From the IMG/VR virus record IMGVR_UViG_3300029286_000009, positions 186,001 to 250,000 of that record: a DNA stretch of 64,000 nt; one strand, written 5' to 3'. Of the stretch, positions 2,451 to 59,686 are shown piece after piece. The stretch's first letter is position 1. Each line of letters opens with the position of its first letter. The notes under the pieces are model-generated. The model made no database searches, was not told the origin of the DNA, and was given only the letters and a program-made list of their open reading frames with translations. Position numbers and translations under genes: made by a program.

Positions 2451-2504
2451 ATACCCGCACATAGTTAGGTTTTTTTGTTACGCGTGCATTATTATATATT
2501 AGGT

Positions 2505-2870
2505 AATAGTGGGAAGAAGGGACTGACGAGTTCTGGAACCCATAGTGCAGTGAGAGCTCATGACTCTTGTTGCACTCCAGGGGTTGACGACCCCGAGTCT
2601 ACTGGACGCCTTTACAAAGGTGCGTGAGAAACACCAATGTGAAGAAGAGGTAGGCGGGCTAGCAACTCAAAGCTAGCTTAAAGAATCTCTCGGATGGCTC
2701 AGCGTGCTTAACATTGTGTGTCGAGAGGCATACAATGGGGATAGGTTTGGTGCCTATTCTTGGAGCAGTGTGAGTGCAGAGAGTTCCTTCTAGAGTGACA
2801 AGTGGGCAGGTATGTCGCACTTACTCTAGGAGGTAGCAAGAAGACTGAGGGGAAACCTAAGGTCTTTTTG
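2505..2870 (+). ncRNA. Candidate multi-hairpin ncRNA of about 365 nt, family not recognised
   Basis: Promoter-like motif upstream; consecutive G-U-containing stems at 2544-2576, 2712-2737 (GAGA loop), 2738-2760 and 2786-2833; terminator at 2841-2869. Confidence 0.5.
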
Positions 2871-3249
2871 TCCCCGAACGGTTAGGAACGTATAAAACTG
2901 GGGGAATGTAGTAAAAATATAGATAGCCCCGCCCCCTTAACCCTTTGAAATCGCTAGACCTTTAGAAGACTAGATGTCCACCCCAAGGCGATATCCGTTC
3001 CGATGCTTTATCTAAGCCTATCTTATTGTTTTTATTCACTATTTTTCCTCTTCCCTTATCGTTGTTTATACATACCCCACTATATTCTCATCCCTGTTTA
3101 TTTATGCTTACTCCGCTGATCGGTTTTCTCTTATAAAACGCCCCTAAAATTTGTCGGGGCTTTCTGTAAAAGTTAAGGATGCTATTATAACATTATAATC
3201 ATGTTTTTGAGCCTACTTATTTAACCATCTAGCTAACTTCTATATAAAA

Positions 3250-4953
3250 TTGTTTACAAAAGGATACCAATTCATGATCACTTATATACCCCCTAGTGAG
3301 ACTGCTGCGCCAGATACTGATAGTCTACCTATTCCGACTGGTGCAGGTCAAATACCAGTATCAAAAGCTGATGGCTCTTACGAAGCTACCGATGCCGGTG
3401 ATATTAAGGTAAACAGTGTTGCGGCTACTGGGGAGTTGTCTTCTGCCTCTGTGGACACCGATGCGTTGTCCCTAAAAAGTGTAGACGAAAAACAACAAGG
3501 CAGTATTACTCCGGAAAGATTTTATGCAGCAGATGAAGATACTGGGTGTTCCTGTGAATTGCATCCGGTTGATGGTCTGACCCTTGCAACTACACTTATA
3601 GAAGGAAATATTGGGGCAGCAGAGTTAGTAATGCTCAGTTCGTTGTCTGATACTATTTTTTCGTCTAAGATGCTGACTGGTAGATTTGAGGTTCTACCGG
3701 CTTTTTATCAAACCGGGTCAACCCCAGGAACTGCTCAACTTAACGGGACCGGTATAGGGATAGGAATGCAATTTATTTGTCCTGCCACTTGTGCTCCTAC
3801 TGCTTTAAGTTTTCATCTCTCAGCTGTTGGATCAGCGGGTACACTAGGAGTAGCAATTTACGATATAACTACAAGCACAAATTTTACCTGCGGAACTACA
3901 GCGAGTATCTCCGCGACTGGGTGGTTCCGTCATACTTTTACAGCGGTCCAACTCTACGAAGGACATCAGTATGAAATACGAGTAACGTGGGTATCCGGCG
4001 ACCTAACTTTGACTCATCATAGAGTCCTACCTGGTCCTGGATGTGGTCATCCTGATTCGTGCACAGGGTTCTCTACGGCTGACAATTGGTCTACGGAAAC
4101 AGCACTCTTAACAGGTTACAGAGAATCTATCCCCAATTTTGTGTTGAATAGTAATGCTGATCATTGTCCCCAACTTGTTTACGGGGGTAACTCCACCGTT
4201 CTACTTCCTGGCTCCGCTGGAGCAACTACAGCTGCGGGGTTATTCCTGGATTGCTCTGCTTTAGTTGCAGGAACACTTTATTATCTCTATGGGTATTCTA
4301 CAGGAGGTGTTTTAGGGGTTGAGGCGTCGACAGTTGCCCCCACGAATTACGCCTTGGGAGATTTCGAGTATAAATCCACGGATTTAACAAGACGGCTCTT
4401 AGGAATGTTGATTCCAGAAGTTCTGATTGGCACAAGTGTTGGTCCCGTAATGGTATCTGACCGGTTATACGTAGCAAACATCAACCCAAAACTTCGTAAA
4501 ATTGGAAAGGTTAATCCTTATACAGTTCCAACAGCAGGAGCCGAAACAGCAGAGCTAATAGGTGCATATTATAGTTCTCCTGCTTCTTGGCGAGCAGATT
4601 CTGACGATTGGAAGGTAGAGGTATTAGTTATGATGCCTTCGCTCCTAGAAGCTAAGTGTTCGGCACAAACCGGTGCTGCCCCAGTAATCGGTATTGCACT
4701 TGATGGCAAGAAATTTAATCCGCAATTTAGTTCAATCGGAGGTGCAGAGTATGGAAATGGCCCATATGGTCATATCGTAGCCAACTTTTCTGCTTCACTT
4801 TCCAGGGGGAATCATTATCTATACCCAATTGCATGGATACGCTCTGACATTGCAGGACAGACTTTAAACTATATATATATGGTGCGGCTGCGGGGGAGAT
4901 TAACTCAATGGCTACTTTCAATGGACAAATTTTGGCATAAGGAACAAAAATGA
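3250..4953 (+). CDS. Fibre / receptor-binding-like virion protein; C-terminus probably frameshifted, start probably ATG 3274
   Basis: Thr/Gly/Ser-rich; C-terminal domain resembles that of 50644..52719; followed by a paralog of the gene that follows that fibre. Confidence 0.65.
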   Translation: MFTKGYQFMITYIPPSETAAPDTDSLPIPTGAGQIPVSKADGSYEATDAGDIKVNSVAATGELSSASVDTDALSLKSVDEKQQGSITPERFYAADEDTGCSCELHPVDGLTLATTLIEGNIGAAELVMLSSLSDTIFSSKMLTGRFEVLPAFYQTGSTPGTAQLNGTGIGIGMQFICPATCAPTALSFHLSAVGSAGTLGVAIYDITTSTNFTCGTTASISATGWFRHTFTAVQLYEGHQYEIRVTWVSGDLTLTHHRVLPGPGCGHPDSCTGFSTADNWSTETALLTGYRESIPNFVLNSNADHCPQLVYGGNSTVLLPGSAGATTAAGLFLDCSALVAGTLYYLYGYSTGGVLGVEASTVAPTNYALGDFEYKSTDLTRRLLGMLIPEVLIGTSVGPVMVSDRLYVANINPKLRKIGKVNPYTVPTAGAETAELIGAYYSSPASWRADSDDWKVEVLVMMPSLLEAKCSAQTGAAPVIGIALDGKKFNPQFSSIGGAEYGNGPYGHIVANFSASLSRGNHYLYPIAWIRSDIAGQTLNYIYMVRLRGRLTQWLLSMDKFWHKEQK

Positions 4954-5339
4954 ATAAATTAACAGATCAATTCTTGGCACTTAATTTTCCGACGATGATC
5001 GGGCTGTATGAAGGTGCCCCGGTTTTCCTTGGCACTCTTACGCCAGAACAAAGCATCATACGAGATGCTATAATCGCAGCCCAAGACAAAACAGGGGCGG
5101 ACTTAGCTATGCTAAAAGCTCTTCTAACCACTGAACAACAAACTTTATATATTGCCGCCCGGAAAATTTCTGTTCAGGCGGAACGACGTAGCCGTTATAC
5201 AGCAGAAACGGATTCACTTAGAGCTGAAATGGATTATGACTATACTGTAGGTTCGGATGAATGGAATGCAGCTTTGGCAGAATGGAAGGGAAAGGTGGAA
5301 ATGATTAAAGCAGAATTACCTTATCCGGCTTTTGAATAA
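4950..5339 (+). CDS. Fibre assembly chaperone-like protein
   Basis: C-terminus RKI.V..ER..RY..ETD..R...DY.YTVGS.EW..AL.EWK.....IK.ELPYP is clearly paralogous to 52712..53170. Confidence 0.65.
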   Translation: MNKLTDQFLALNFPTMIGLYEGAPVFLGTLTPEQSIIRDAIIAAQDKTGADLAMLKALLTTEQQTLYIAARKISVQAERRSRYTAETDSLRAEMDYDYTVGSDEWNAALAEWKGKVEMIKAELPYPAFE

Positions 5340-7893: not shown

Positions 7894-9183
7894 TTAATCT
7901 AACATACTTACTAGCCCTTTTTCCAGAGCTATTTTTCTGTCTATAACTAAAATACCTGTATCACCCATTTTTTTCACCCGAGATTGTTCTTTAATTGCAA
8001 ACTTGGGTATAAATACTTTTTCCCCGTCCACTTCACATAGTAGTGCCTTATTAACTCCTGTGTCTTGGAGCACTCTTACATTATCAATTGTAGCTACTCC
8101 TGTTACGGTTGGAAGCTTATCTGCGTGCCTAAAAGCGTGGCACGTTGCACATAGTGGACGAAAATCTGTCCACAATTCAAAACCTACTCGATCGTATAGC
8201 ATGTGATGTAGGTGCACTGTAGACAGAGAAATTGGACGCAAACAATCCCAACAGCGATCAAACGGACCAGTAGGAGTAATCATGGCAGCTTTTTTGTTGC
8301 ACCACTCTGGCATCTTACGATATTCTTCATAAGATTTTTTTTCAAATCGTTTTACACCCATCACTTGGTTATTGGCTAGTATCTCGGTTATGTTGGTCTC
8401 TATAAATTTTAACTGCCGCCTAATCACGTCTCTTGAATAAAAGAAATACTTTAACACAATAGCATCAATCCGCATATGAAACTGATGATAATCTACAAAC
8501 ATCTGCATAGCTATCGCAAGTGGAACTGGTAAAGACTTTTTTGCTGGTATACCCCATTGTTTGCGATAATTTTCAAAATCAGTGCTATTACGTAGCTGAA
8601 AAGGAAAGTAAAGCGTTAAGACATCTTTGCTCCACCCTTTCCCTATGTATAAGCTTTTAAACCACTCCTTTGTTAGTGGGGTTACCGCAATTTTAGGTTC
8701 TACATAGTTAGACGCGTAGTTATCCCAACGATACTGAATACGAGGATATACCCATTCAGCTGCTCGTGGATCGTCTGCTATGAGTCCTCGGAGCAGTGTT
8801 ATGTCTTCATGGCATAGTTCTTGTTCTTTATCCCACTTACTCTTAAGCTCATATTTACCGCGAGTCATAACCGCAAATAATACATCTTCTGCCCAATCTC
8901 TAAAGGCTTTGGCTCTATCAGTCTTAGCTAGCATTGCTGCTCTTATGACTCCGTGGTAACTGATTACTCGTAGTTCTTGATTGCCTCCAGGTGTCGTCAT
9001 TTTGACGACCCCCTGTTTAGACTTGAATTCATCGGTATTTCTGTCTATTAAACGGTAAAAATTATGCGTGTTTGAATAACCTAGAGCGGCTGCGATGTGG
9101 GACATAACTGCCCACCGGTTTCCTTCGTGGTCATAAATTTCTATTTCTGTGTTTTCAAATTTTACTAATTCTGTATTATTCAT
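7894..9183 (-). CDS. Bro-N domain protein with C-terminal HNH nuclease
   Basis: N-terminal TPGGNQ...ISYHGV...AKAFRDW (Bro-N); C-terminal CWDC...LHH..Y...LCATCH. Confidence 0.8.
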   Translation of the reverse strand: MNNTELVKFENTEIEIYDHEGNRWAVMSHIAAALGYSNTHNFYRLIDRNTDEFKSKQGVVKMTTPGGNQELRVISYHGVIRAAMLAKTDRAKAFRDWAEDVLFAVMTRGKYELKSKWDKEQELCHEDITLLRGLIADDPRAAEWVYPRIQYRWDNYASNYVEPKIAVTPLTKEWFKSLYIGKGWSKDVLTLYFPFQLRNSTDFENYRKQWGIPAKKSLPVPLAIAMQMFVDYHQFHMRIDAIVLKYFFYSRDVIRRQLKFIETNITEILANNQVMGVKRFEKKSYEEYRKMPEWCNKKAAMITPTGPFDRCWDCLRPISLSTVHLHHMLYDRVGFELWTDFRPLCATCHAFRHADKLPTVTGVATIDNVRVLQDTGVNKALLCEVDGEKVFIPKFAIKEQSRVKKMGDTGILVIDRKIALEKGLVSMLD

Positions 9184-15249: not shown

Positions 15250-16534
15250 GTCAAATACCGCCAGCTAAAGCAGGCGGCTTGTAAGTCGTACTTACGATAG
15301 GCTGTTTGACATCAGCCCGACTTCCAGCGGACATGCCCTTGGAAGCAAGGTAGTTTAGGCGAATATTTTTACTAGCGTTGAGGTCTGCATTGTGTTGAAA
15401 ACCACAAGACTTACATACAAACCAAGACTGGCTCTGCCGGTTCCTTCTCGCTATGTATCCGCAACGGGAACACTTCTGGCTTGTGTATCGAGGATCAACA
15501 TATTCAATCGCAATGCTCCTCATCCTGCCTTTGTAATCCAAGAAAGAACGAAGTCTCTCAAAAGACCAAGAGTGGATTCTTCGCCGTTGTTTTCTTTTCG
15601 CCTTTACTCTGCCTCGAATATCAACAAGATCCTCAAGGACAACGACAGAACCGGGGACAACTGTATCAACTATTCGCCTGGAAATTACGTGGTCACAATC
15701 CTTTCGGAAGCGGTTTTCCTTCTGCGAAAGCTTTTTAAGGTGTCTTTTCGCAGAATCAGTGCCTTTCGATTGGAGAGAGCGTTTGATTCTAAAGTATTTC
15801 TTGGTGGTTTCTTTCCATTGTCGTTCACCAATAAAGTCGGCATTACTGGTGACTGCGGGACGGTTAACTCCGAGGTCAATTCCTACGGTGATGTTCGTGG
15901 GCTCAACAACTGCATCGTCTGTAGAGACAACAACGTGCAAAAAGACTCTTCCGTCTCGCTTGAAGCAGAGGTCAGAGGAGCAGACTTTCCAGGAAAGATA
16001 TCTGCGGTAGTAGTCACAGACTATCAACGTAATGGGGATTCTTCCCTCGACAGAAGAAAGAAAAGCGGTTCCCTTATCAAGTCTAATCGTGGCGGATCTA
16101 GCATCATATCTAACTGTGAGGGCTTTCCCTGTAGGGCAAGAAGCCTTTTTACCTTTTTTCAACTTTGCTTTAGCAGATTTCAGAGCTTCTGTTGCTTTCA
16201 TTCTAGCGGAACACACGAGTTGACTCGGAAGGGACGTGGTTTCTCTTTCAAAACGATAGGTAGCATGGTGCAAATCAACTCCGTTGACCCTTGGGGCTTC
16301 CCATCCTGTTTGACAGACCCTAGCAAAAGACTGCGAAAATTGTTCTGCGGTCTCTTTGAGAGCTTGCAATTTGTCACTTTTAACAGGAAGTTTGAGAGTT
16401 ACGGTTTGCACGTTTGCTCCTTCATATACAAGGTAAAGCATCCGCAACTAAAAGTCAAGGCACAAATACTAAGAAAGGAGGAGCCGGCTTCCTCTGCCGC
16501 CTAAAGACGGCAGTCTCCGCCGGGACAAATCTTT
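15250..16534 (-). mobile_element. IS200/IS605-family TnpB-only (non-autonomous) element
   Basis: Terminal hairpins; plus-strand ends GTCAA at 15250 and ATGA at 16535; interrupts a reconstructable small ORF. Confidence 0.85.
15251..16447 (-). CDS. tnpB: TnpB RNA-guided nuclease
   Basis: RuvC motifs GIDLG, VLEDL and NADLNAS; zinc finger CSRC/CKSC; YTSQKCS. Confidence 0.92.
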   Translation of the reverse strand: MRMLYLVYEGANVQTVTLKLPVKSDKLQALKETAEQFSQSFARVCQTGWEAPRVNGVDLHHATYRFERETTSLPSQLVCSARMKATEALKSAKAKLKKGKKASCPTGKALTVRYDARSATIRLDKGTAFLSSVEGRIPITLIVCDYYRRYLSWKVCSSDLCFKRDGRVFLHVVVSTDDAVVEPTNITVGIDLGVNRPAVTSNADFIGERQWKETTKKYFRIKRSLQSKGTDSAKRHLKKLSQKENRFRKDCDHVISRRIVDTVVPGSVVVLEDLVDIRGRVKAKRKQRRRIHSWSFERLRSFLDYKGRMRSIAIEYVDPRYTSQKCSRCGYIARRNRQSQSWFVCKSCGFQHNADLNASKNIRLNYLASKGMSAGSRADVKQPIVSTTYKPPALAGGI

Positions 16535-29103: not shown

Positions 29104-29621
29104 GGGGCACACAGGTATCGACAGACGTTATGAGTAGATTTGTATTGGTGGTCGGTGTGAGTGGTACCGTAAATCATTCGAATTATAAATGCCGAAGATA
29201 ATTCTTTCGACATGCTCTCAGCTTTTTGTGAAGCCGACCGTAAGGTTAGTGTAGCATACGCTGGTTAATAGGGCGGAGTTCCCAGTAACTTATCAACAGA
29301 AAACTGGGTGGCGGAGGCAAGTGGGTTTTATACCTGCTTCCTCTCCTGGTTACGAGGCTAAACTGACCTGGTGGAGGCACGCGGGAAACCGCGTCCCCTA
29401 AATCCTATGCAAGTAGGTATCCTAGTGTCAGGCATTAGGATAGAGATGGGTAGGGTAATCGCCACCGTGCGGGAAACCAAACCTTCTAGCCCGCAAAAGT
29501 CAGCGGCGGGGTCTCGAAAAGGCTGGCAAACTCTCTGTCGGGAGTATAAATATGGACTACACCATCTAAATTTACATTTCGAAAGGCGGACTGGATCTGG
29601 GTTCGACTCCCAGGTGCTCCA
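29104..29621 (+). ncRNA. ssrA: tmRNA
   Basis: Acceptor stem GGGGCAC/GTGCTCC-A with G3-U70; T-arm CTGGGTTCGACTCCCAG; 5' GGTATCGAC; resume context ATAAAT-GCC at 29191; tag ORF to 29268. Confidence 0.92.
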
Positions 29622-29898
29622 TAAAATTGTCTTATAACAAAGCATTGCTCCCGAAGACATACAAGATTTGTATAATAAACATTGTAATTGGGTCGATGTC
29701 AAAGGTTTTAGGCATCTCCGATCGCCAACTGCGACGTATCCGAAAGATGCATATTAGCTGATCTGCCATGTGTAGAAACAGTAAAGTTAACGTCAACAGT
29801 GCTAGGCGGGGCGTTGATGGTTGATACTAGTCTAGCGGGGGAATAGTTAACGTGACTGTTCCCCCATTTCATATGTAAAGAAGGTAAGGAGAGGTTAA

Positions 29899-31125
29899 AT
29901 GGCGGAAGTTTTGAGTCAAGAAGTAGTTGTATATCAAGAGCATATAGTGGATTTTTATGGAGACCAAATTATATCGATACAGGATGAAAATAATGATGTG
30001 TGGTCTCCTGTAAAGGGATTGTGTGGTGCGATTGGCATCAAAGGTGTCCAAGACCAGATTAACAAAATTAAAAATGACGGGGCCTTCAGATTCAAGGCTA
30101 GCCTTGTAACTGCCCTAGATGGTAAGAATTACTCAACTTTTTGTATTCACGCTGATGATATTCCGATGTGGTTAGCAACAATTGGTACCGGTCGCGTTGA
30201 TGAGAGTGTAAAAAGTAAGTTGATTCTATATAAGAGAGAGTGTGCTAATGTATTGCGGGACTACTGGACTAAGGGTGCTGCTGTAAATCCCCGTTTGGGT
30301 AATCTTGATGTAGACCAGATTAAGAACATTGTTAATGAAGCTCTACAGGTTGCATTGGACGAATACAGACAGGCTAGGACGCCTGAGGAAATTGCTCAAC
30401 TTATCTTTGAGCGAGACGTTGTTATTTTGGCTGAGACGGCGAACCGTGTAGAAAGTCCCTTTCGTGATTCTATTTACAGACGCATCGAAGTGCTTATGGA
30501 CAGTCGTTTTGGTAAACTAGAACCTGCTGAAGAAGCAGAATTAGTAAAGGGACTTACTCCTTTGACCGAGAGCCTATTCCGTAAGCTATATTTGGGGCAG
30601 GGTTGGTGCCGAGATAAACTAGCTCTTTATTTCCCTAAGGAACTGAGTAGCAAGACACAGTTTGACCAGCTCCTAAAGATGTGGGATATTCCAGCACCTA
30701 AAAGGCAGTCTAGAACTTCTATCGCTTTCGCCCGCCGACTTTTGCGAGAAAATCATGTTAATAAGAAGACCATAAATCAGTTGATTACTGAGTTCAATAG
30801 GTCGCGGGAGTCTATTTTGCGGGCTATCAGTGATCAATGGAATTCTTTGAACAAGTCTTTCAAGAAATATTGCACCGCAGGCATAATTCCTAAAGGCAGG
30901 GCTTACAGTGATTATATTGATAGGTCTCCACTTTGGGTAGCCAAGCGTGAAGCTTTTAAGGAGACTTTTGATAATACTTGTTTCTATTGTGGATACCAGT
31001 CCCCTACTGGTATTGCGGTACACCATCTAAACTATATCCGTAGCGGACAAGAACTACCAACAGATTTGGAAATTGTTTGTAACACTTGCCACCAGAAGCG
31101 GCACAAAGAGAAGTATAACGTGTAA
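29899..31125 (+). CDS. P22 antirepressor N-terminal domain plus C-terminal HNH protein
   Basis: V.FYGD.I, LC.AIGI, WL..I, L..YK.EC..VL.DYWTKG.A.NPR; CFYC...HHLNY...CNTCH. Confidence 0.82.
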   Translation: MAEVLSQEVVVYQEHIVDFYGDQIISIQDENNDVWSPVKGLCGAIGIKGVQDQINKIKNDGAFRFKASLVTALDGKNYSTFCIHADDIPMWLATIGTGRVDESVKSKLILYKRECANVLRDYWTKGAAVNPRLGNLDVDQIKNIVNEALQVALDEYRQARTPEEIAQLIFERDVVILAETANRVESPFRDSIYRRIEVLMDSRFGKLEPAEEAELVKGLTPLTESLFRKLYLGQGWCRDKLALYFPKELSSKTQFDQLLKMWDIPAPKRQSRTSIAFARRLLRENHVNKKTINQLITEFNRSRESILRAISDQWNSLNKSFKKYCTAGIIPKGRAYSDYIDRSPLWVAKREAFKETFDNTCFYCGYQSPTGIAVHHLNYIRSGQELPTDLEIVCNTCHQKRHKEKYNV

Positions 31126-37240: not shown

Positions 37241-38437
37241 ATGGAAAAAATGGGAAAGGAAATAGTAACAAAGGAATTTAATTTTATGGAAGACACTATT
37301 GTGGCGGTTGACCAAAACGATGTGTGGTATATTTCTCCACGACATATTTGTGAAAATGTAGGATTAGATTGGGCTTCTCAGAGTAGAAAAATTGAGAAGG
37401 AGTCTGAGAAGTTCAACCGTTGTCTTATGACAACAGTTGGTCACGATGGTAAACTGCGTGAAATGGTTATGATACCTGTGACACGTATAAATACATGGAT
37501 ATTGAGTATCAATGCAAAGCGTGTCAAAAACTTAAGAGTAAGAGCATATCTACGGAAATACCAAGATCAGCTATCCGATTGGTTGTATGAAGCGGGATTT
37601 CTAGGAGCGGCGGTAAATAAGGATGTGTTGTTACTCCCTGCGGAACGACAGGTGGAAGTATTGGGAGATGCTCTTCACAGAGCTCGCTTGCAAAGTGAAC
37701 CATTGAATGAGTATCAAGAGAAGATAGCGACCATTTTAGGTTTACCTGACTTAGAAGGGATGGATAAATATAAGACTCAGCGTCTGCAGATGTTGACAGA
37801 TGTTAAATTAGGTGTTGCTAGTCCTTTGTTCTCAAAAGGTTTGCGGGGAGTAGTAAGACTAACTGATGAACTATTTTACATCGCTTATATGATAGAAAGG
37901 TGGTGTGTTGATAAGCTGATTTGCTGTTTTCCACAAGACTTGCCCACGCCTGTGGCGATAGAGCAATATATAAGAGATAAAGGTTATTGTGAACCTTGGG
38001 TGGTTAAACCCATTAGGCACGCAGATGCACGAAGGGTGGTTAAGCTTAATACTCTGTTTAGCTATAGTATTTCTGATTTAATAATACGATTTAATAAACC
38101 AGCTGAATTGATACACAATGCTATGTTTAGAGTAGTAAAAGATATGGAGGATGTATTTACTGCGACTGAAGTTAAACTGGAACTTCCAGCCATAAGAGAC
38201 AGAGCCAGTATGTCAGCTAGGCGGGAGCAGTATATGAAAACGGCTGAGTGGTGGGATAAGCGAAACGCTTTTTTCAAAGTTTTCAATTGTTGTGTAGTTT
38301 GTGGGGATATGGAGGTTGCATCTTCGCGATTTGAGGCACACCACTTGCACTATGATACATTAGGATTTGAGTCACCTTGGGATTTAGTGCCCTTGTGTAA
38401 AGATTGTCATACTAAGGTAGAAGGAAGGAGTAGGTGA
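37241..38437 (+). CDS. P22 antirepressor N-terminal domain plus C-terminal HNH protein
   Basis: ICENVGLDWASQ..K, DGKLREM, WILSIN..RVK; CVVC...HHLHY...LCKDCH. Confidence 0.82.
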   Translation: MEKMGKEIVTKEFNFMEDTIVAVDQNDVWYISPRHICENVGLDWASQSRKIEKESEKFNRCLMTTVGHDGKLREMVMIPVTRINTWILSINAKRVKNLRVRAYLRKYQDQLSDWLYEAGFLGAAVNKDVLLLPAERQVEVLGDALHRARLQSEPLNEYQEKIATILGLPDLEGMDKYKTQRLQMLTDVKLGVASPLFSKGLRGVVRLTDELFYIAYMIERWCVDKLICCFPQDLPTPVAIEQYIRDKGYCEPWVVKPIRHADARRVVKLNTLFSYSISDLIIRFNKPAELIHNAMFRVVKDMEDVFTATEVKLELPAIRDRASMSARREQYMKTAEWWDKRNAFFKVFNCCVVCGDMEVASSRFEAHHLHYDTLGFESPWDLVPLCKDCHTKVEGRSR

Positions 38438-38992: not shown

Positions 38993-39226
38993 GTCAACCA
39001 CCCCACGCCTAAAGGCGGGGGCTTGAAAGAGCCTTGGTTGACTAGGGGGCATTAATTTGCAGCAGTTGAGAACCAGAAATACATACACACCCCAAAATAT
39101 TCCGCACGTTTCGGGCGACTGTGGTTGGACATTAAAAGTCCTGGTGGGTAGGGACGGTGTGTCCAGCTTAAAAACGGTTTCCAACAATCCCGATGCGGTC
39201 CCAACCTCAGAAAAGAGGAGCGAAAC
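38993..39226 (+). ncRNA. omega-RNA (HEARO-like) scaffold
   Basis: About 230-nt structured leader of iscB with GTCAACC/GGTTGAC closing stem. Confidence 0.8.
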
Positions 39227-40435
39227 TTGAGAGTATTTGTTAAAAATCAAAAAGGTAATCCATTAATGCCGACTACTCCAAGAGGAGCAAGAGTGCTTCT
39301 CTGTGCAGGGAAAGCGGTAGTGGTTAAACGAACACCGTTCACTATCCAACTCACAGCAGCAACTGGCGAGACAAAACAGCCTGTCGTCTTAGGTGTAGAC
39401 AGCGGCTTCACTCACGTCGGTTTATCTGCGGTATCAGACAGGGCTGAATTGTATGCGGCAGAAGTCTTATTACGCACCGACATGGTTAAGCTCAATGCCG
39501 AACGAGCAATGTATCGACGTAACAGGCGAAGTCGCAAGACATGGTACCGTCAACCGAGGTTCCTTAATAGGTCGAAACCGAAGGGTTGGTTGGCACCTAG
39601 TATTCAGCACAAACTAGACTCACATAAGAAGTTGATCGACAAGGTAAAAGGACTGCTGCCAATCACCAAGGTTGTTATTGAGGTTGCCGCATTTGATATT
39701 CAGAAGATTAAAAATCCTGAGATATTCGGCGAAGGCTACCAGAATGGTGAGCAGTCCGGTTTTTGGAATGTCAGGGAGTATGTATTTCACAGGGACAGCC
39801 ACAAGTGCCAAGCTCCAAAGTGTAATCATAAAGACAAAATACTTAACGTCCATCATGTTGTTAGCCGGCAGACAGGCGGTGATAGACCCCATAATCTAAT
39901 TACACTTTGTGAAACCTGTCACAAGAGTCACCATAAAAAAGCACTAGACCTTAAGATCAATGCGGGAAACGGATTCAAAGCAGAAACGTTCATGTCAATG
40001 GTAAGGTGGAGATTAACTCAGGACACAGGCTCACAACACACATTTGGTTATATCACAAAAACAAATCGCATTGCTGCACGTTTAGAGAAGTCTCATATCA
40101 ACGATGCTTTCATTATTGCAGGTGGTGGACAGAATCGGACCACAGCATTAACGATCAAACAAGTAAGAAAGTGCAATCGCAAACTATACAAAGGCAGCCG
40201 AAGCCACATCAGGAATACTGCCCCACGTGAAATATTAGGTTATCGACGCTTCGATAAGGTGAAGTGGGGTCGTGTTGAAGCCTTTATTTTCGGAAGACGA
40301 TCCACTGGCAATTTCGATATCAGGGACGGCAACGGGAAAAGTCTCCACAAATCTATTAACGCAAAACACATTAGGTTGCTGGAAAGAGCTTCAACAAGCT
40401 TGATTTCCAGAACCTCACTTCCTCCCCAGTGCTAA
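39227..40435 (+). CDS. iscB: IscB RNA-guided nuclease
   Basis: PLMP, RuvC-I GVDSG, RRNRRSRK bridge helix, IEVAAFD, HNH (VHH...N...CETCH), SHINDA. Confidence 0.95.
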   Translation: MRVFVKNQKGNPLMPTTPRGARVLLCAGKAVVVKRTPFTIQLTAATGETKQPVVLGVDSGFTHVGLSAVSDRAELYAAEVLLRTDMVKLNAERAMYRRNRRSRKTWYRQPRFLNRSKPKGWLAPSIQHKLDSHKKLIDKVKGLLPITKVVIEVAAFDIQKIKNPEIFGEGYQNGEQSGFWNVREYVFHRDSHKCQAPKCNHKDKILNVHHVVSRQTGGDRPHNLITLCETCHKSHHKKALDLKINAGNGFKAETFMSMVRWRLTQDTGSQHTFGYITKTNRIAARLEKSHINDAFIIAGGGQNRTTALTIKQVRKCNRKLYKGSRSHIRNTAPREILGYRRFDKVKWGRVEAFIFGRRSTGNFDIRDGNGKSLHKSINAKHIRLLERASTSLISRTSLPPQC

Positions 40436-41626: not shown

Positions 41627-43399
41627 ATGGCTTTTGAACAATTAGAAAAACAATTTGGTACAAAATGTAAAGAACTTATAGAGATATGGAAGAGATACCC
41701 CTCCTTGGCTGCTAAAGACCTCCTATACAACCCCCTGTCATCCAATCCCGACGAAAACTTCTCTCTATCCCCCATTCAACGCGTTGTGACTAACCGAATA
41801 TGGCATGCTCGTAATAGTATTACTGTAGCTTGCCGTGGTTTTGGTAAGACATTTGATGCTGCTACTATGGGTATTTTATCTGCACTTCTCAATCCGGGAC
41901 GAAGAGTGGGATGTATGTCAGCTTCTTTTCGTCAGGCTAAACAGATATTTGAGGAGGTTTCTAATATATGGAATAGGTCTCCTCTCTTACAGGCATGTAC
42001 TGATCGTGCACCTGTCATAGCTAATGATGCTTGTACACTGGTATTTAAAGCTGTGCCTGGGCATAACCCCTCTAAGATGATCGGTCTTCCGCTTGCGGAT
42101 GGGCAAAAGGTCAGGGGGGCGCGTATGCATACACTGATGCTGGATGAAGTTTGTGTCATCCCAGAAAATACTTTTCAAACTGTTCTCCGCCCCTTTGCTG
42201 CTACATCTATGGAGCCCACCAAACAGACCCGGTTGGCTAAAGAACGTAGACGTATTATGGGCCTTAATCTATCTGAGGATAAGAAGCAAGAAATGTTAGA
42301 CTTATTATCGGGGCGGTCTTCAGTTAACCAGATACATATGTTTACATCGGGATATTATTCTTTTAATTGGGTGTATAATCTGTATTGCAAATATTCAGAC
42401 CGTATGCATGGTATTAAGCGGGGTGCCATAGATGGTTTAGATGATGGTTATACTGATAATCCTCTTCATTATGCTACCTTCCAAATTCCTTATTGGTCTT
42501 TAGAAGAAGGATGGTTGTCTGAGGGTGGTTTATCTGATGCTCGCCGTGACATGTCCTCTATTCAGTTCAGAATGGAATATGAGGCTGCCTGGATATCTGA
42601 TAGTGGTGGGTTCTTTAAGATATCTGACATAGAACAATGTCGTGCTGAGAATTTAGGTATAGACTTGCAAATGCGTCCTTACGGGGATCCTGGAAGACAG
42701 TATATTATGACACTTGACCCTGCTCGTACCTCTGATGCTTTCGCTATTGTCATTTCTGAAGTTGACCCCACGTTCGGACTCAAGATATCTCATATGGAGC
42801 AGCATTTCAAGGTTCCCACCCCCAAAATTGTTGAACGTATACTCCAGCTTACTAGTAAATTTAATATTGTTGAAATTGGGATGGATCGAGGCGGCGGTGG
42901 CCAAACTGTAGCTGACTATTTGGCACATGGTAATGTTGAATTTTCTCCAATCTTTGATAAGGATGATGAACGATATAGGGGAATGCGTGGGCGACATATT
43001 TTACAACTTATAGATTTTAGTCCAACGTGGATTGAGAATGCAAATCATAATGCGAATTTCTTGTTAGAACGAAGAAAAGTAGCTTTTCCGAAGCGCCCAA
43101 TGGAAGGTGCGTCTTCCTCAAGTAAACTGGATGAACTTGATAGGAATGTAAAAATCGTTGAGCAATTAATCATGCAGCTGATTAGTATACAGATATCTGA
43201 AACTAGAACAGGGAAAGCTCATTTTGATTTACCTGAAACTGGTGGTGGGTTTGTAAAGCATAAAGATTTATATTCAGCATTTATTATGGCGTGTGATTTA
43301 GTATATAATAAAATTCAATCAAGTCTATTACCTACGGTTAATATGCCCTTACTAGGCATAATTACACCAAGGATGAATATGGGCGGAGGATACTACTAA
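41627..43399 (+). CDS. terL: Terminase large subunit
   Basis: Walker A RGFGKT, RG.R..LMLDE, F.MEY.A, nuclease LDPAR and KDLYSA. Confidence 0.92.
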   Translation: MAFEQLEKQFGTKCKELIEIWKRYPSLAAKDLLYNPLSSNPDENFSLSPIQRVVTNRIWHARNSITVACRGFGKTFDAATMGILSALLNPGRRVGCMSASFRQAKQIFEEVSNIWNRSPLLQACTDRAPVIANDACTLVFKAVPGHNPSKMIGLPLADGQKVRGARMHTLMLDEVCVIPENTFQTVLRPFAATSMEPTKQTRLAKERRRIMGLNLSEDKKQEMLDLLSGRSSVNQIHMFTSGYYSFNWVYNLYCKYSDRMHGIKRGAIDGLDDGYTDNPLHYATFQIPYWSLEEGWLSEGGLSDARRDMSSIQFRMEYEAAWISDSGGFFKISDIEQCRAENLGIDLQMRPYGDPGRQYIMTLDPARTSDAFAIVISEVDPTFGLKISHMEQHFKVPTPKIVERILQLTSKFNIVEIGMDRGGGGQTVADYLAHGNVEFSPIFDKDDERYRGMRGRHILQLIDFSPTWIENANHNANFLLERRKVAFPKRPMEGASSSSKLDELDRNVKIVEQLIMQLISIQISETRTGKAHFDLPETGGGFVKHKDLYSAFIMACDLVYNKIQSSLLPTVNMPLLGIITPRMNMGGGYY

Positions 43400-45414
43400 T
43401 GGCTAAGAGGATTGTTGCAAAGGCAAAAAAAGAGGTTCAGGCGTTTCTAAATGATTACCCCGATGCGGAATTTGCGGGAGCACAAAAGGCAGAGGATGGT
43501 ACAACTAAGTTAATATTTCGTCCTAGGCTTGCTGTGTTAGCCCCTGAAGAACAACCAGCATTGGCACGTGACGGGAGACATGTTCCACCCGAGATAAGAG
43601 TTAAGCAGCGTGCTATAGCTGAAATCACTTACCGAGACGCACTTATACATTCCGATCTTGATCTTGCTAAACCTGACATCACTTCTGAGCACCCCAAGAA
43701 AATTTATAATAGAATATTTGGGTATTATCGTAGTATGGACGTTTTTGGATCGTATATTGACGTCAAAGCAGATCTCGCCGTGTCTGGTTTTGAGAATGAT
43801 TGCGAGGATATGGCTATTAAAGAGTTCTATGATAATTGGTGCCAGGATGTTGATCTGGAGCAAGTTTTGGAATGGATATATCACGAGTTTTTTACTTCCG
43901 GATTAGTTCGTACCTATAAGGTGGTAGGGCGTTATGAACCTCAGGTTAATACATTGTCGGAGGTCAAGAAGCCCCCGCAACCCGCGACTCCCAAGAGACA
44001 AGAGGGGGAAGATGACTTGGATTATAAGTTGCAAAGACAAATGTGGCTACAAGGGCAGATACCGGATTATATACCAGAAGCAGAGAATCTAAAAGAGTAT
44101 GCTGCAAGAAAGAAGCGTTGGTCTAAGGGTTTTATCCCGATTGCGTACACCGTATTAAACCCCCAGGCTGTAGAACTGGTAGGTCCTCCAGATTTTAATC
44201 AAACCCGTGTGGTTTTGCACCCATCAGACGAAATGTCGGAACTGGTGAAACGAGAGAGTATTACAGGGAAAATTACCGATGCGGAGAAATCCATACTAGA
44301 GAGTATGCCCCCAGAGATAAAGCATGCTATTAAGGAAGGTAAGCCAATAGAGCTTGATCCGGATTTTGTGGGGGCGATAGATAATAGGCGACGTCCTTAC
44401 GAAAAGTATGCTATTAATCCCATGGTCAGAGCTCTAGAGGCTGTAGAATATAAGAAATCTTTACGCGAGGCTGACTATAGTACAATAGATGGTATTACGT
44501 CAGAAATATTAGTAATTACTGTCGGCGATAAAGACAATCCTGTTTTGCGTGTGGATGACTTGAAAAAAGTTTCGGATTTATTTAATACAGCACAGAAAGC
44601 TTTTCAGGTGGTTTGGAACCATACTCTAAAAGTAGAAAGAGTGTCCGCGCAAAACGTAGACCAAATCTTTGGGGCGGATAAATTTGAACAAGCTGAAAGA
44701 GATATTTCAGGGTCAATGCGGGTTCCTAGGGCCCTGTTAGATGGTCTGGTAATTGGTAATACCAGTAAAGAAGCCATGTCTATGGCTGTTAAGTCCCTGA
44801 CTGCAGAGATTGCTTTTGCACGTCGACAAGTTACGCGGTGGCTGTATAAAGAGTATAAAGCTATTGCAGATGCGTATGGATTTAAGCGCATCCCTTCTAT
44901 TCGTTGGGACGATATGATTTTAAAAGATGAATTAGCTATGAAGACCCTAGTAATGTCTTTGGTAGATAGGCGTATTATCTCTTATGAAACCGCACACAAA
45001 CTGCTTGGATTTGATCCAGAGTTTGAAAAAAAGATGCTTACCAAAGAAAAGAAAGATGTTATTGATGGGAACTTTGGTATTCTCGGGTCTCCTTACCAAC
45101 AGGGTGCTGGTAATAGCGGAGATAGTCAAGACAAGCAAAAAACACCATCCGGCACGCCCTCGGAGGGCCGTCCGAAAGGTCAGCCTGCACCTAAGACCCC
45201 GGCACCAGCGACCCCAGAAGGAAAAACGAAGCATATAATTAAGAAAGAGGTAAGAACTATAAAGAAGGAAGAGATACACCGCCAAGCAGCTAGCATAGCA
45301 GAGCTGTTTGATGAGCAGGAATTGAACTCTTTAGAAACACTTATCAAGGCAATAAGGGAGATTAAGGGTATAGAATTAGGTAGCCTGGTAAATCAGGAAG
45401 AGGGGTTGGTATGA
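43399..45414 (+). CDS. Portal protein
   Basis: Directly after terL; size; L.DRRIISYET...LG and GRP tail. Confidence 0.78.
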   Translation: MAKRIVAKAKKEVQAFLNDYPDAEFAGAQKAEDGTTKLIFRPRLAVLAPEEQPALARDGRHVPPEIRVKQRAIAEITYRDALIHSDLDLAKPDITSEHPKKIYNRIFGYYRSMDVFGSYIDVKADLAVSGFENDCEDMAIKEFYDNWCQDVDLEQVLEWIYHEFFTSGLVRTYKVVGRYEPQVNTLSEVKKPPQPATPKRQEGEDDLDYKLQRQMWLQGQIPDYIPEAENLKEYAARKKRWSKGFIPIAYTVLNPQAVELVGPPDFNQTRVVLHPSDEMSELVKRESITGKITDAEKSILESMPPEIKHAIKEGKPIELDPDFVGAIDNRRRPYEKYAINPMVRALEAVEYKKSLREADYSTIDGITSEILVITVGDKDNPVLRVDDLKKVSDLFNTAQKAFQVVWNHTLKVERVSAQNVDQIFGADKFEQAERDISGSMRVPRALLDGLVIGNTSKEAMSMAVKSLTAEIAFARRQVTRWLYKEYKAIADAYGFKRIPSIRWDDMILKDELAMKTLVMSLVDRRIISYETAHKLLGFDPEFEKKMLTKEKKDVIDGNFGILGSPYQQGAGNSGDSQDKQKTPSGTPSEGRPKGQPAPKTPAPATPEGKTKHIIKKEVRTIKKEEIHRQAASIAELFDEQELNSLETLIKAIREIKGIELGSLVNQEEGLV

Positions 45415-50643: not shown

Positions 50644-52719
50644 ATGTCAACAGTTATTCAAGTTAAAAGAGGTACTGAGGCACAGATATTAGAAAACCCA
50701 ATGGCAGTTGGGGAGTTAGCCCTATGTACCTCAACTTGCTCAATTTTTTCTTATAACGGTGTAACCAAATGCCTGATTGGTAAAGCAATCGTAGATACTT
50801 ATGACAATATGACTACTTACAGCGGTGTAAGTGGCCGCTTCTTCTTCAGTTCTGACACGGGAAATTTGTATGTTCATACAGGAACAGTCTGGTCTGGTAT
50901 TTCTTTATTAGACAACTATATAACTTCTTCAACTTTATCCACAACCAGTGGCAATATTGTATCACAAATAATCATCTCACATGGCAGTTTACAGAATTTA
51001 AACACTGATGATCACACACAGTATTTCTTAGCAGACGGTTCTAGAGAATTATCTGGTAATTTACTACCAGAGATGACTGGTGCTAGTGGTGTAGTGTCAA
51101 CGCGGGACTTAGGCAGTCCTACCCAGAAAATAAATAATATTTATGTGCATGATGTCCGTATGGGTGGGGAATCGTTATATGTGAATGATAAACTCATTCT
51201 GTATGATACATCACCTGAATTAGTTTTTAGAACAGATGCGAATCAGGATTTATCTCTAAAGACGTACGGACTTGGTGACATAAACCTAATATCAGATCAT
51301 GCTGATGTGGGTTTAGTTGCCTACGACACTTTTTCTGTTATAGCTGAAACAGTAGATTTATGGGCGGACGTCAAAGTTACTGGAAAGGTTTCATCTTCAG
51401 AAGGATTCCAGATCAATGAAGCTGCTCCAGCAGGTCAGTTTTTGAGGTCTAATGGGACAGTGTTTTTTGGTGGAACAATTCAAACTGGGGATATCCCCGA
51501 TATTTCTGCAAACTATATAACTCCTGCTAGATTAACTACTGTGTCGGGTGATCTCATTACTCAAATCCCTTCATTAGAAGAGTATGCAACCCAAAGTTGG
51601 GCAAATGGACAATTCATTACACCAGTTGTTCTGACAACTACTAGCGGAGATATAGTAACACAAATTCCGAGTTTAACAAATTATGTTACTACGTCTACTC
51701 TATCTACTGTAAGTGGGAATATAATGACGCAGATTCCTGATGTGGTGGGAGGAAGATTGGATTATGTTTCAACAACCCAGATAAAATGGTCATTTTTAAA
51801 TTCAAATCAGGTACGAATTTTCAACAATTCTACTTTTCTCGAAGAGGTTGTTAACTGTTCTTCTGAGCCTACTCTTTCATCTACAGGTAATGATATAGGT
51901 GGTGTAGCAATAACCTACGATACAGTTTATGATATATTTGCGGTTTACACTAGTGCTACTACTATCGCATTGGCTGTTGCTAAATGGGCTGTATCTACTG
52001 CTGGTTCTAGTGCAAGATATGCTGCGTGGGTTACGAGTACGGATTATAAAGTAGGGGATAAAGTGTCTAACGGTGGTTCCTATTACCCATGTATTGCGGC
52101 ACATACATCTGATACTTTTGCTACAGATTTAGCTGCTGGAAAATGGGGACCAGCCATGGCTGGTACCGGAGATCTTTTGGGGTTGGATATACTTGGTGGT
52201 TCTCCTGTTTTTTCGAATACCGGTGCATGGCGGGGGTATAGATGGTTAGGGACAGTTACAACTTTTAATGATTCGGGATCGAAGTTTAAGAGTAGCACAA
52301 CGCAATTATCTATTTCAAATTATTATAATGCTAAATTATTTAGGATTGGTCCTGCAAATGTAACTGCATCTTGGACGTATGATACTGCTGTTTGGAGGGA
52401 AAGCAATACAGGAACTGGGCAGACAAGAGCTGTTCATGCCCCATGTAGAACACAGTATGTTACCGGAGTAATAAGTGAGCATACGAATACTGCTGTTGGT
52501 GGGGCAATTTGGCTTGGTATCGCCGTAGACTCATCTACTACTAATACTGTTACTGCTTCTCACGCTTTTTCTAGCACTTGGTTTTGGCTTGTAAATCCCA
52601 TTTCTTTTTCATTGGCTAAAGGCTATCATTATATTACGTCATTAGAATATCCACAGGCTGGAGTTAATACGATTATGGGTGGTGGCTACTTACAAACCCA
52701 TATAATGATACTTGCATAA
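50644..52719 (+). CDS. Fibre / receptor-binding protein with Mtd-N-like anchor and CBM5/12-like insert
   Basis: IQVKRG...GELA; TTxSG repeats; AW....Y.VGDKV...G..Y.C..AHTS. Confidence 0.7.
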   Translation: MSTVIQVKRGTEAQILENPMAVGELALCTSTCSIFSYNGVTKCLIGKAIVDTYDNMTTYSGVSGRFFFSSDTGNLYVHTGTVWSGISLLDNYITSSTLSTTSGNIVSQIIISHGSLQNLNTDDHTQYFLADGSRELSGNLLPEMTGASGVVSTRDLGSPTQKINNIYVHDVRMGGESLYVNDKLILYDTSPELVFRTDANQDLSLKTYGLGDINLISDHADVGLVAYDTFSVIAETVDLWADVKVTGKVSSSEGFQINEAAPAGQFLRSNGTVFFGGTIQTGDIPDISANYITPARLTTVSGDLITQIPSLEEYATQSWANGQFITPVVLTTTSGDIVTQIPSLTNYVTTSTLSTVSGNIMTQIPDVVGGRLDYVSTTQIKWSFLNSNQVRIFNNSTFLEEVVNCSSEPTLSSTGNDIGGVAITYDTVYDIFAVYTSATTIALAVAKWAVSTAGSSARYAAWVTSTDYKVGDKVSNGGSYYPCIAAHTSDTFATDLAAGKWGPAMAGTGDLLGLDILGGSPVFSNTGAWRGYRWLGTVTTFNDSGSKFKSSTTQLSISNYYNAKLFRIGPANVTASWTYDTAVWRESNTGTGQTRAVHAPCRTQYVTGVISEHTNTAVGGAIWLGIAVDSSTTNTVTASHAFSSTWFWLVNPISFSLAKGYHYITSLEYPQAGVNTIMGGGYLQTHIMILA

Positions 52720-53170
52720 TTATGGGGAGGGTGTTGATATGAACGAAGTGATGGACGAGAAAATTTTGGCGGAGGCACAAAAATCAAAAGAAATTCATAA
52801 CGAATTGTTGGCAGTAGGGCTGTTAGTTAGTGGTGTAGATTCTAATGATAACATACATTTAGATGGGGCTGATGCCCAAGGTTTAGTTCCGTTAGTATTG
52901 GCAGCACATGGGCTCAGTTCCTCGTCAGCTGAATGTATAGCCTTAAAAATTGCTTTAGGAGAAACATCTTCAGAGTGGTTGGCTTATATTGGGGTGAGGA
53001 AGATTCCCATAAAATTACAGCGCGAGGAGAGGTTCAGAACAGAAACAGATCCCGTTCGTATGAATATAGATGATGAATATACGGTAGGGTCTGCAGAGTG
53101 GACGACTGCGTTAGAGGAATGGAAAACTTTGAAGAGTCAAATTAGAACTGAGTTACCCTATCCAGGATAA
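52712..53170 (+). CDS. Fibre assembly chaperone-like protein; start probably 52739
   Basis: Paralog of 4950..5339. Confidence 0.65.
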   Translation: MHNYGEGVDMNEVMDEKILAEAQKSKEIHNELLAVGLLVSGVDSNDNIHLDGADAQGLVPLVLAAHGLSSSSAECIALKIALGETSSEWLAYIGVRKIPIKLQREERFRTETDPVRMNIDDEYTVGSAEWTTALEEWKTLKSQIRTELPYPG

Positions 53171-58597: not shown

Positions 58598-59686
58598 GTG
58601 TGTTATAAAATGGCTATTAGTTTAGAAAGAAAATGTGAACTTTTTAAAGCGACCGCCGACATGCACACGCCGCGGGGCCTTAGGGCTTTCCAAGAGTTTG
58701 CAGCTTCTTTAACCGGACCAATTTTAAAGAAGGTTGAAGAGAAGTCTTACATGCGGCAGTTGTTTTCGGTCATCAGGCTTGGTCCTGGCCAGCAACCGTC
58801 ATTCCCAATCGCGGATGACTTTGATAGCCCTATCTGGATTCTTCCTGGTATGGCTTATGTTGCACAGGACACCATGGAACTCGGGGCAGAAGAGGTCTTA
58901 ATTCCTACGTTCACCTTACAGGCGGCGAAGAATTGGCTCCTCAAGTATGCTCGTGAGGGACGTGTGGATATTGTTACTAAGGCTCAGCAGGCAGTTGCTA
59001 ATGCAATTGCTGCATATGAGGAAGAGGCTGGATGGAGAACCATTATTCCTGCTGTAACTTCAGCATTTGATGGTGCAGGCATTCTACCTCCTCGTGCTGC
59101 TCCTGTATATGAAATGGCAGCGGGCGATGCCTCTGCGGGCTATTTCTCAAAGGAGCTTTTGAATCGCATGATAGTTGGATATCAGCGGTTAGGTCGTAAT
59201 CTGGGGGAACTTTGGATTTCTCCGGAAGACATGGCTGACATTAGAGAGTATACGGACACCGAAGTTGACCCAGTAACTCGAAGGGAAATTTTTCAGGCTG
59301 CTGGTCTAGGCAGTATTTGGGGAGTTACCTTTAGGGTTGCAGATTGTCTAGGTGTGCGTGGTAAATACAACATCAATGACAAGACGTCATTGTATGGTCC
59401 GTTCAGGGGCGACACAAGTAATCACTTTAATGATTACACAATCACTCACGGTAATGTTCTTGATGAGAATGGAAACTTGGATACGGCTGGTGAGACTCAG
59501 GTATATGGGTTTGACAAGTCCGACATGTCTCTTATCATGATAATTAAGCAGGAGTACGAAGCCCATGACGATCCGACTCTACACAGACGCCAGCAACAAG
59601 GCTTTTATGGCTGGTGCGAGTATGGCTTTGCATGTCTCGAAGCCCGCAGCATGTGCCTTGGTGTCGTTGATAGGTATACCCCATAA
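58598..59686 (+). CDS. Major capsid protein; start probably 58610
   Basis: About 360 aa, last large gene of the head module, C-terminal G.YGW.EYGF, strong terminator downstream. Confidence 0.78.
   Translation: MCYKMAISLERKCELFKATADMHTPRGLRAFQEFAASLTGPILKKVEEKSYMRQLFSVIRLGPGQQPSFPIADDFDSPIWILPGMAYVAQDTMELGAEEVLIPTFTLQAAKNWLLKYAREGRVDIVTKAQQAVANAIAAYEEEAGWRTIIPAVTSAFDGAGILPPRAAPVYEMAAGDASAGYFSKELLNRMIVGYQRLGRNLGELWISPEDMADIREYTDTEVDPVTRREIFQAAGLGSIWGVTFRVADCLGVRGKYNINDKTSLYGPFRGDTSNHFNDYTITHGNVLDENGNLDTAGETQVYGFDKSDMSLIMIIKQEYEAHDDPTLHRRQQQGFYGWCEYGFACLEARSMCLGVVDRYTP

What the first reader, a model, noticed from the sequence alone, without database searches (positions are those of the whole stretch)
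4861..4953. (AT)n tract frameshifts the fibre C-terminus: possible phase switch
Seen: TATATATATAT at 4870-4880. The present frame ends in an atypical MVRLRGRLTQWLLSMDKFWHKEQK. Removing one AT gives YIYGAAAGEINSMATFNGQILA*, which ends in ILA* exactly as the paralog 50644..52719 does, with the stop at 4938-4940 forming the TAAGGA RBS of the chaperone gene. Established: dinucleotide tracts mediate slipped-strand phase variation. Inference: reversible change of a receptor-binding tip; a plain mutation or assembly error is equally possible.
Basis: partly seen in the sequence, partly recalled or inferred. Interest (0 to 1): 0.6.

Follow-up and report, generated by a model that had tools for sequence, protein, structure and literature searches.

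The report
AT-repeat frameshift allele of phage fibre
An extra AT in a short TA repeat shifts the frame at the end of a tail-fibre-like gene of an uncultivated jumbo phage. The intact and the shifted versions both occur in near-identical copies of this phage, so it is a real slippage mutation, but nothing shows a fast reversible switch.

Summary
TATATATATAT lies at 4870-4880 inside ORF 3274-4953 of a 259.7-kb IMG/VR jumbo-phage contig. The present frame ends in an unrelated 24-residue tail. With one AT fewer, the gene ends ...NYIYGAAAGEINSMATFNGQILA*, with the stop at 4938-4940.

That in-frame protein exists. P0156 (554 aa) is encoded on five other contigs from ENA, Logan and JGI. The three I read are at least 99.97% identical to the window and carry a 9-nt tract.

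The 11-nt frameshift allele also occurs on an independent Logan contig (SRR15164342) that lacks the window's private SNP. An assembly error is therefore unlikely.

A family of about 1,000 proteins, absent from Pfam, conserves a C-terminal G-x-[IVL]-x-x end that only the in-frame reading supplies. AlphaFold2 puts these residues in the confident last beta-strand.

Evidence for an evolved switch is lacking:
- The tract is short and follows from common codons for Y-I-Y.
- It is not enriched in the genome and is absent from the 55%-identical homolog.
- One +AT event explains all haplotypes.

Verdict: a real slippage-born, probably inactivating allele. A phase switch is possible but unproven.

The parts
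3274..4953 (+). Receptor-binding (tail-fibre-like) protein gene, frameshift allele: 559 aa as called (P0005). The ATG at 3274 is the start used by the gene callers; a TTG at 3250 lies upstream in frame.
   Evidence: Member of an unnamed family of about 1,000 proteins, some of which carry an Mtd_N phage-fibre N-terminus. The AF2 model is built of beta-sandwich domains that resemble phage baseplate and tail-tip proteins and lectins.
4870..4880 (+). TA tract, 11 nt here. It is 9 nt in the in-frame allele of four loci from other assemblies.
4881..4940 (+). Ancestral 3' end of the gene, out of frame here. It encodes GAAAGEINSMATFNGQILA plus TAA, including the family's conserved glycine at position -5 and the last beta-strand.
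   Evidence: G550 conserved in at least 90% of 54 sequences; strand TFNGQIL, pLDDT about 90.
4879..4953 (+). Out-of-frame tail of the present allele: 24 codons (MVRLRGRLTQWLLSMDKFWHKEQK) plus TGA, which overlaps the next ATG.
   Evidence: The HMM alignment to the family stops at the tract.
4456..4456 (+). Private SNP of the window's contig: T here, C in all four other assemblies. It gives Ser395 instead of Pro, which the 55%-identical homolog also has.
4950..5339 (+). Small downstream ORF (P0003, 129 aa), a paralog of 52712/52739-53170. It is possibly fibre-associated; its function is not established.
   Evidence: phrog_2432, unknown function; 46% identity over 68 aa. No BLAST similarity to the ORF downstream of the homolog's fibre gene.
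50644..52719 (+). Second fibre gene (P0002, 691 aa; Mtd_N and CBM_5_12). Its C-terminal domain is distantly related, and it ends ...IMILA*.
52712..53170 (+). Paralog of the small downstream ORF (P0004). The likelier start is the ATG at 52739, which follows GGGGAGGG.

Best explanation
The window carries a genuine natural allele of a phage receptor-binding-protein gene. In this allele, replication slippage added one AT unit to a short TA run, from TATATATAT to TATATATATAT. The +2 shift replaces the last 19 residues with 24 unrelated, basic residues. The lost residues include the end of one beta-strand, a short strand and the conserved terminal strand with its G-x-I-x-x end. The distal beta-sandwich domain is therefore probably misfolded or non-functional (inferred). 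The phage would still have its second fibre gene in the main structural module (inferred). The intact allele circulates alongside it in near-identical genomes. The change can in principle revert by loss of one AT. Even so, the data fit an ordinary repeat-mediated indel that persisted in one lineage better than an evolved high-frequency switch.
For: Shown:
- The tract and both reading frames.
- The in-frame 554-aa protein P0156 is on five contigs. The four loci read from three of them carry a 9-nt tract.
- The frameshifted 559-aa protein occurs on the window's contig and on Logan contig SRR15164342_56707, which lacks the window's private SNP.
- The five assemblies differ at only 13 alignment columns in 21.7 kb: 3 SNPs, 1 SNP 12 nt from a contig end, a 7-bp tandem indel and the AT indel. 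There is no four-gamete conflict.
- Nine other SSR-bearing proteins of the window (T8, G7, GA x5, a 9-nt AT tract and others) show only single substitutions or start-call differences among assemblies, and no length variants.
- The family C-terminus is conserved, and only the in-frame reading matches it.
- The AF2 models of the homolog and of P0156 both end in confident beta-strands.
- The tract arises from common codons and is not enriched.
- The homolog's DNA has no tract at this place.
Against:
- Loss of function is inferred from conservation and models and was not tested.
- I could not establish that the samples are independent. Accession searches in papers found nothing.
- That the one length-variable repeat found lies in a host-recognition gene is what a contingency locus would also look like.
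Confidence: 0.63

Rival explanations
1. True contingency locus. The TA tract switches the accessory fibre ON (9 nt) and OFF (11 nt) reversibly and at high frequency, as bet-hedging over host range or receptor use.
For: Both states occur in near-clonal genomes from several assemblies. It is the only length-variable repeat among eleven SSR-bearing genes compared. It lies in a receptor-binding gene of a phage that has a second fibre cassette. Phage contingency loci are documented for homopolymers (bioRxiv 10.1101/2025.10.21.683753; Sorensen et al. 2021, Cell Rep 35:109214, cited in PMC10877375).
Against: - The tract has only 4.5 or 5.5 units. From my own knowledge, known dinucleotide switches use longer tracts.
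- The tract is not enriched, is explained by codon usage and is absent from the homolog.
- No 7- or 13-nt state is present in the 90% cluster.
- One event suffices for the haplotypes.
- SSRs are reported as under-represented in coliphage tail-fibre genes.
Confidence: 0.2
2. Sequencing or assembly artefact in the window's contig.
For: Metagenome assemblies can miscall repeats, and no reads could be examined.
Against: The same 11-nt tract is in an independent Logan assembly of another run with a different base at window 4456. Other repeats of similar or greater length are stable across assemblies.
Confidence: 0.07
3. The frameshifted tail is a functional new C-terminus that changes receptor specificity rather than destroying the protein.
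For: The shifted frame stays open for 24 codons and ends in an ATGA overlap that keeps coupling with the next gene. The allele persisted long enough to be found in two assemblies.
Against: A random frame stays open for 24 codons about a quarter of the time (my estimate). The tail matches nothing in the family, and the nearly invariant glycine and the terminal strand are lost.
Confidence: 0.06
4. Recoding: ribosomes or RNA polymerase slip on the UA run, so the 11-nt allele still yields some full-length protein.
For: A +2 shift on UAUAUAU allows perfect re-pairing of the tyrosine tRNA (read from the sequence).
Against: There is no X XXY YYZ heptamer. A -1 slip gives no re-pairing. +2 hops are rare (my knowledge). 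The in-frame DNA allele exists, so no recoding need be invoked.
Confidence: 0.03

Closest known systems
Hypermutable polyG tracts in Campylobacter phages (Sorensen et al. 2021, Cell Rep 35:109214; cited in PMC10877375)
   Same: A simple repeat inside a phage gene changes length by slippage and shifts the frame, creating phage subpopulations with different host-recognition properties.
   Different: Those are long G homopolymers with demonstrated high-frequency variation within lysates. Here the repeat is a 4.5/5.5-unit TA dinucleotide, only two states are seen between assemblies, and no rate was measured.
Contingency loci of T2/T4 and other phages (Gomez, Barrick and Waters, bioRxiv 10.1101/2025.10.21.683753)
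   Same: Polymerase slippage at short repeats (6 nt or more) in phage ORFs gives reversible frameshifts.
   Different: That work covers homopolymers only. Variants were detected at about 3e-4 per read within populations. Tail-fibre genes were depleted of SSRs. Here the variant is fixed at consensus level in two assemblies.
Bacterial dinucleotide-repeat phase variation, such as the (TA)n between hifA and hifB of Haemophilus influenzae and the CT/AG repeats in Helicobacter pylori outer-membrane genes (my own knowledge, not checked here)
   Same: The number of dinucleotide units sets the ON or OFF state.
   Different: Those tracts are typically longer and are maintained by selection. The tract here is a chance product of Y-I-Y codons.
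Other phage systems that vary fibres: diversity-generating retroelements (Bordetella phage Mtd) and invertible fibre segments (Mu Gin, P1 Cin) (my own knowledge)
   Same: The target is the distal, receptor-binding end of a fibre. The second fibre of this phage even carries an Mtd_N domain.
   Different: These need dedicated enzymes (a reverse transcriptase or an invertase). None of them is involved at 4870-4880.

Membership tests
SSR contingency locus (slipped-strand phase variation) | A simple repeat in the ORF whose unit number sets the reading frame | tested here: met
   A 9-nt tract gives the in-frame 554-aa protein; an 11-nt tract gives the frameshifted 559-aa protein.
SSR contingency locus (slipped-strand phase variation) | Tract-length polymorphism among otherwise near-identical genomes | tested here: met
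   Identity of at least 99.97% over 8.6-21.7 kb, with the tract differing.
SSR contingency locus (slipped-strand phase variation) | High-frequency, reversible switching within one clonal population | not testable with these tools
SSR contingency locus (slipped-strand phase variation) | Recurrent, independent changes (homoplasy) on the genome phylogeny | tested here: inconclusive
   There are only three haplotypes at the informative sites and no four-gamete violation, so a single event suffices. The Logan frameshift contig does not cover the other informative indel.
SSR contingency locus (slipped-strand phase variation) | Repeat longer or more frequent than chance, or conserved in relatives | tested here: not met
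   Two tracts of 11 nt against 0.3-0.6 expected. P(TATATATAT | Y-I-Y) is 0.16. The homolog L002 has no tract.
Unnamed phage RBP family (about 1,018 proteins at E<=1e-3; not in Pfam or PHROGs) | Core motifs (PAFYQTG, TLYY.Y, GPV..D.R, G.HY) and a G-x-[IVL]-x-x C-terminal end | tested here: met
   The core motifs are present in the window's protein. The C-terminal end is present only in the in-frame reading.
Tail-fibre assembly chaperone (for ORF 4950-5339) | Match to a chaperone family (for example Caudo_TAP or Phage_tail_APC), or a demonstrated requirement for fibre folding | tested here: not met
   No Pfam hit. phrog_2432 has unknown function. Only weak Atlas leads (TM 0.40-0.48 to Phage_tail_APC; XkdW by features). 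No similarity to the ORF after the homolog's fibre gene.
Programmed ribosomal frameshift | A slippery heptamer that allows tRNA re-pairing in the new frame, and conservation of the two-frame arrangement | tested here: not met
   No X XXY YYZ heptamer at the site. Relatives and sister genomes encode the end in one frame.

The most novel reading that the evidence does not exclude
The TA run is a working dinucleotide contingency locus in a jumbo phage. It would toggle an accessory receptor-binding protein ON and OFF while a second fibre stays constant. That would be a bet-hedging device not yet described for dinucleotide repeats or for jumbo phages.
Probability: 0.17. Interest if true: 0.55.

Novelty: new member of a known kind. 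Interest (0 to 1): 0.3.

Why it matters
As it stands, this is a clean natural example of a repeat-slippage frameshift in a phage host-recognition gene. The intact and the broken alleles were both recovered from near-identical genomes. It also shows that the deposited protein of this contig has a wrong-frame C-terminus. The work defines a large unnamed family of phage receptor-binding proteins with a conserved C-terminal strand. If read data showed both tract lengths within single populations, this would extend phage contingency loci, known so far for homopolymers, to dinucleotide repeats and to jumbo phages.

Tried and rejected
- Close relatives: none in GenBank phages by tblastn or megablast, and none in IMG/VR by peptide or DNA patterns. 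The metagenome DNA scan returned only the window's own contig.
- The genome search on the ENA loci: those records are not held, so I could not test whether the other 11-nt TA tract (genome 162476) varies between assemblies.
- The search for related loci with the 54-sequence alignment found no usable conserved stretch. With the 3-sequence alignment it found one fragment in a Deltaproteobacteria MAG, which gives no host information.
- Paper searches for the sample accessions found nothing.
- The Pfam and PHROGs scans of the two fibres gave no family for the window's fibre.
- Programmed frameshifting was considered and rejected (no slippery heptamer; an in-frame DNA allele exists).
- I did not fold the frameshifted protein.
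The in-frame reading was taken from the window by reference in scripts, and afterwards from the natural protein P0156.

Full report
**Where the window lies.** The window is positions 186001-250000 of a 259,732-bp IMG/VR virus record, Ga0247841_10000060, with a CheckV completeness of 96%. It is an uncultivated jumbo phage of 42% G+C. The main structural module is at about 41-60 kb of the window. It holds the terminase (41627-43399), the portal (43399-45414), a fibre-like protein (49318-50577), a second fibre (50644-52719) and the major head protein (58598-59686). The gene in question, 3274-4953, and the small ORF after it, 4950-5339, form a lone plus-strand pair. The genes after them are mostly small and lie on the minus strand.

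**The observation.** TATATATATAT occupies 4870-4880.
- In the present frame the protein ends ...TLNYIY-MVRLRGRLTQWLLSMDKFWHKEQK*. Its TGA (4951-4953) overlaps the next ATG.
- In the -1/+2 frame the text reads ...YIY-GAAAGEINSMATFNGQILA*. Its TAA is at 4938-4940, followed by GGA and, 6 nt later, the ATG at 4950.
- The second fibre ends ...HIMILA*.

**Which frame is ancestral.**
- A word search found a 55%-identical homolog, P0006 (622 aa), and a distant one, P0007.
- After the aligned tyrosines, P0006 has 19 more residues, ending ...MGIIEC. That is the same number as the in-frame reading of the window. P0007 ends ...KGIIWC.
- A profile search of 1.84 billion representatives found 1,018 relatives at E<=1e-3, and 78 at E<=1e-30. 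None of those scanned belongs to a Pfam family for this region.
- In 113 relatives the extreme C-terminus is patterned. Position -5 is G in 57, position -3 is I, V or L in 73, position -1 is G, A or C in 70, and position -7 is V, F, I or L in 76.
- On a weight matrix of the last eight residues, TFNGQILA scores 5.8 bits against a family median of 7.0. Only 33 of 7,387 random frame ends in this genome (0.45%) do as well. KFWHKEQK scores -3.0.
- An HMM of the family's C-terminal segment aligns the in-frame reading through column 38 of 45. It aligns the current reading only to column 23, which is the tract.
- In a 54-sequence alignment the glycine at position -5 (G550) is conserved in at least 90% of sequences.

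**Both alleles exist in nature.**
- The 90%-identity cluster of the window's protein has three members. They are the window's own 559-aa protein, P0156 (554 aa) and P0157 (559 aa).
It is encoded on five contigs. I read three of them as four loci: ENA ERZ27250635 (165.6 kb; loci L004 and L006), ENA ERZ27250602 (320.4 kb; L007) and Logan SRR8536341 (15.1 kb; L008). All four loci carry TATATATAT.
- P0157 is the frameshifted form. It lies on Logan contig SRR15164342_56707 (13.5 kb, L005), which carries the 11-nt tract.
- A five-way alignment over 21.7 kb has 13 variable columns:
  - three SNPs;
  - one SNP 12 nt from the end of the Logan contig;
  - a 7-bp indel in a TCCTGAT/TCCTGAC tandem, in an intergenic stretch at genome 184415-184421;
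  - the AT indel.
- The window's contig has a private T at 4456 (Ser395). All the others, including the other frameshift contig and the distant homolog, have Pro.

An assembler artefact is therefore unlikely. The same extra AT appears in a different data set on a slightly different background.

**Controls.** I looked up nine other window proteins whose genes contain repeats: T8 and T7, G7, GA x5, a 9-nt AT tract with A7, a CA 9-mer and others. Across the same assemblies they differ only by single amino-acid substitutions or by start-codon calls. None has a length variant.

**What the frameshift does to the protein.**
- AlphaFold2 with a 54-sequence alignment gives confident models. The intact homolog (P0006:200-622) reaches pLDDT 92 and pTM 0.92. 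The natural in-frame allele (P0156:134-554) reaches pLDDT 88.7 and pTM 0.90.
- Both models are stacks of beta-sandwich domains. Foldseek finds phage baseplate and tail-tip proteins (phi812, Bxb1, Douge), lectins and many uncharacterised phage proteins, with low overall TM-scores.
- In the P0156 model the tract-encoded residues lie in strand TLNYIYG. This is followed by a lower-confidence loop, a short strand INS and the terminal strand TFNGQIL, which has pLDDT of about 90.
- The frameshift therefore removes the end of one strand and the last two strands, including the nearly invariant glycine. That this abolishes folding or function is an inference; I could not test it.

**Is it a phase switch?**

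Points in favour:
- Both states exist in near-clonal genomes.
- It is the only length-variable repeat found.
- It lies in a host-recognition gene of a phage that has a second fibre.

Points against:
- The tract has only 4.5 or 5.5 units.
- The genome holds two 11-nt TA tracts against 0.3-0.6 expected, which is not remarkable. The other one is intergenic, at genome position 162476.
- TAT makes up 64% of Tyr codons and ATA 39% of Ile codons. Y-I-Y therefore becomes TATATATAT 16% of the time by codon usage alone.
- The homolog's DNA has no repeat at this place.
- No 7-nt or 13-nt variant is in the cluster.
- The haplotypes need only one +AT event: consensus background, then +AT (the Logan contig), then two further SNPs (the window).
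- The other indel in the region is also repeat-mediated, as ordinary spontaneous indels usually are.

The decisive test is counting tract lengths in reads.

**What is known.**
- Frameshifting repeats in phage genes have been described for homopolymers. One case is the polyG tracts of Campylobacter phages (Sorensen et al. 2021, cited in PMC10877375).
- The other is T2, T4 and further phages, where repeats of 6 nt or more vary at about 3e-4 per read. In that study SSRs were under-represented in tail-fibre genes (bioRxiv 10.1101/2025.10.21.683753).
- Dinucleotide phase variation is known in bacteria (my own knowledge).
- The present case is at most a new member of this kind, and membership in the strict sense (fast and reversible) is untested.

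- 50644-52719 shares only a distantly related C-terminal domain with the gene in question.
- ORFs 4950-5339 and 52712-53170 are true paralogs, with 46% identity over 68 residues.
- Their role as chaperones is only suggested, by position and by weak Atlas leads. The ORF after the homolog's fibre gene shows no similarity to them.

**Verdict.** An assembly error is unlikely. The best reading is a real slippage-born frameshift allele that probably inactivates an accessory receptor-binding protein. A true phase switch remains possible, at about one chance in five or six, and would need read-level or culture evidence.

Noticed in passing
window 2480-2900 (+): An ORF-free, G+C-richer stretch of about 420 nt upstream of the fibre gene folds far better than shuffles on the + strand (MFE -166 kcal/mol, z -7.7, 0 of 100 shuffles as good). 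The - strand does not (z -1.4). No Rfam family matches. It is a candidate structured RNA of unknown kind.
   Followed up: partly
window 38993-39205 (+) and 39227-40435 (+): HEARO RNA (RF02033, 111 bits against a gathering score of 83) lies directly upstream of a 402-aa HNH-endonuclease ORF (phrog_119, E 3e-63). This is an IscB/OMEGA-like RNA-plus-nuclease module inside a jumbo phage.
   Followed up: no
window 29104-29624 (+): A phage-encoded tmRNA: Rfam RF00023 at 61.9 bits against a gathering score of 47. ARAGORN gives the tag peptide ASSPGYEAKLTWWRHAGNRVP*.
   Followed up: no
genome 184415-184421 (1,585 nt before the window's start); L006:5141-5154: A 7-bp indel in a TCCTGAT/TCCTGAC tandem, in an intergenic stretch. 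It is present in the window's contig and in ERZ27250635, and absent in ERZ27250602 and SRR8536341. It is a second slippage-type polymorphism.
   Followed up: partly
window 50644-52719: The second fibre carries an Mtd_N domain (major tropism determinant N-terminus) and a CBM_5_12 module. I did not look for a diversity-generating retroelement. Between assemblies it differs by one substitution, P670S.
   Followed up: no
window 7894-9183 (-), 29899-31125 (+), 37241-38437 (+), 15251-16447 (-): Three fusion ORFs combine an Ant/Bro-N-like anti-repressor domain with an HNH domain. There is also a transposase (phrog_506), which suggests many mobile or selfish elements in this part of the genome.
   Followed up: no
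L007 (ENA ERZ27250602 contig, 320,389 bp): A near-identical contig is about 60 kb longer than the window's 259,732-bp record. Either the IMG/VR record is incomplete despite the 96% estimate, or the ENA contig is concatemeric or chimeric.
   Followed up: no
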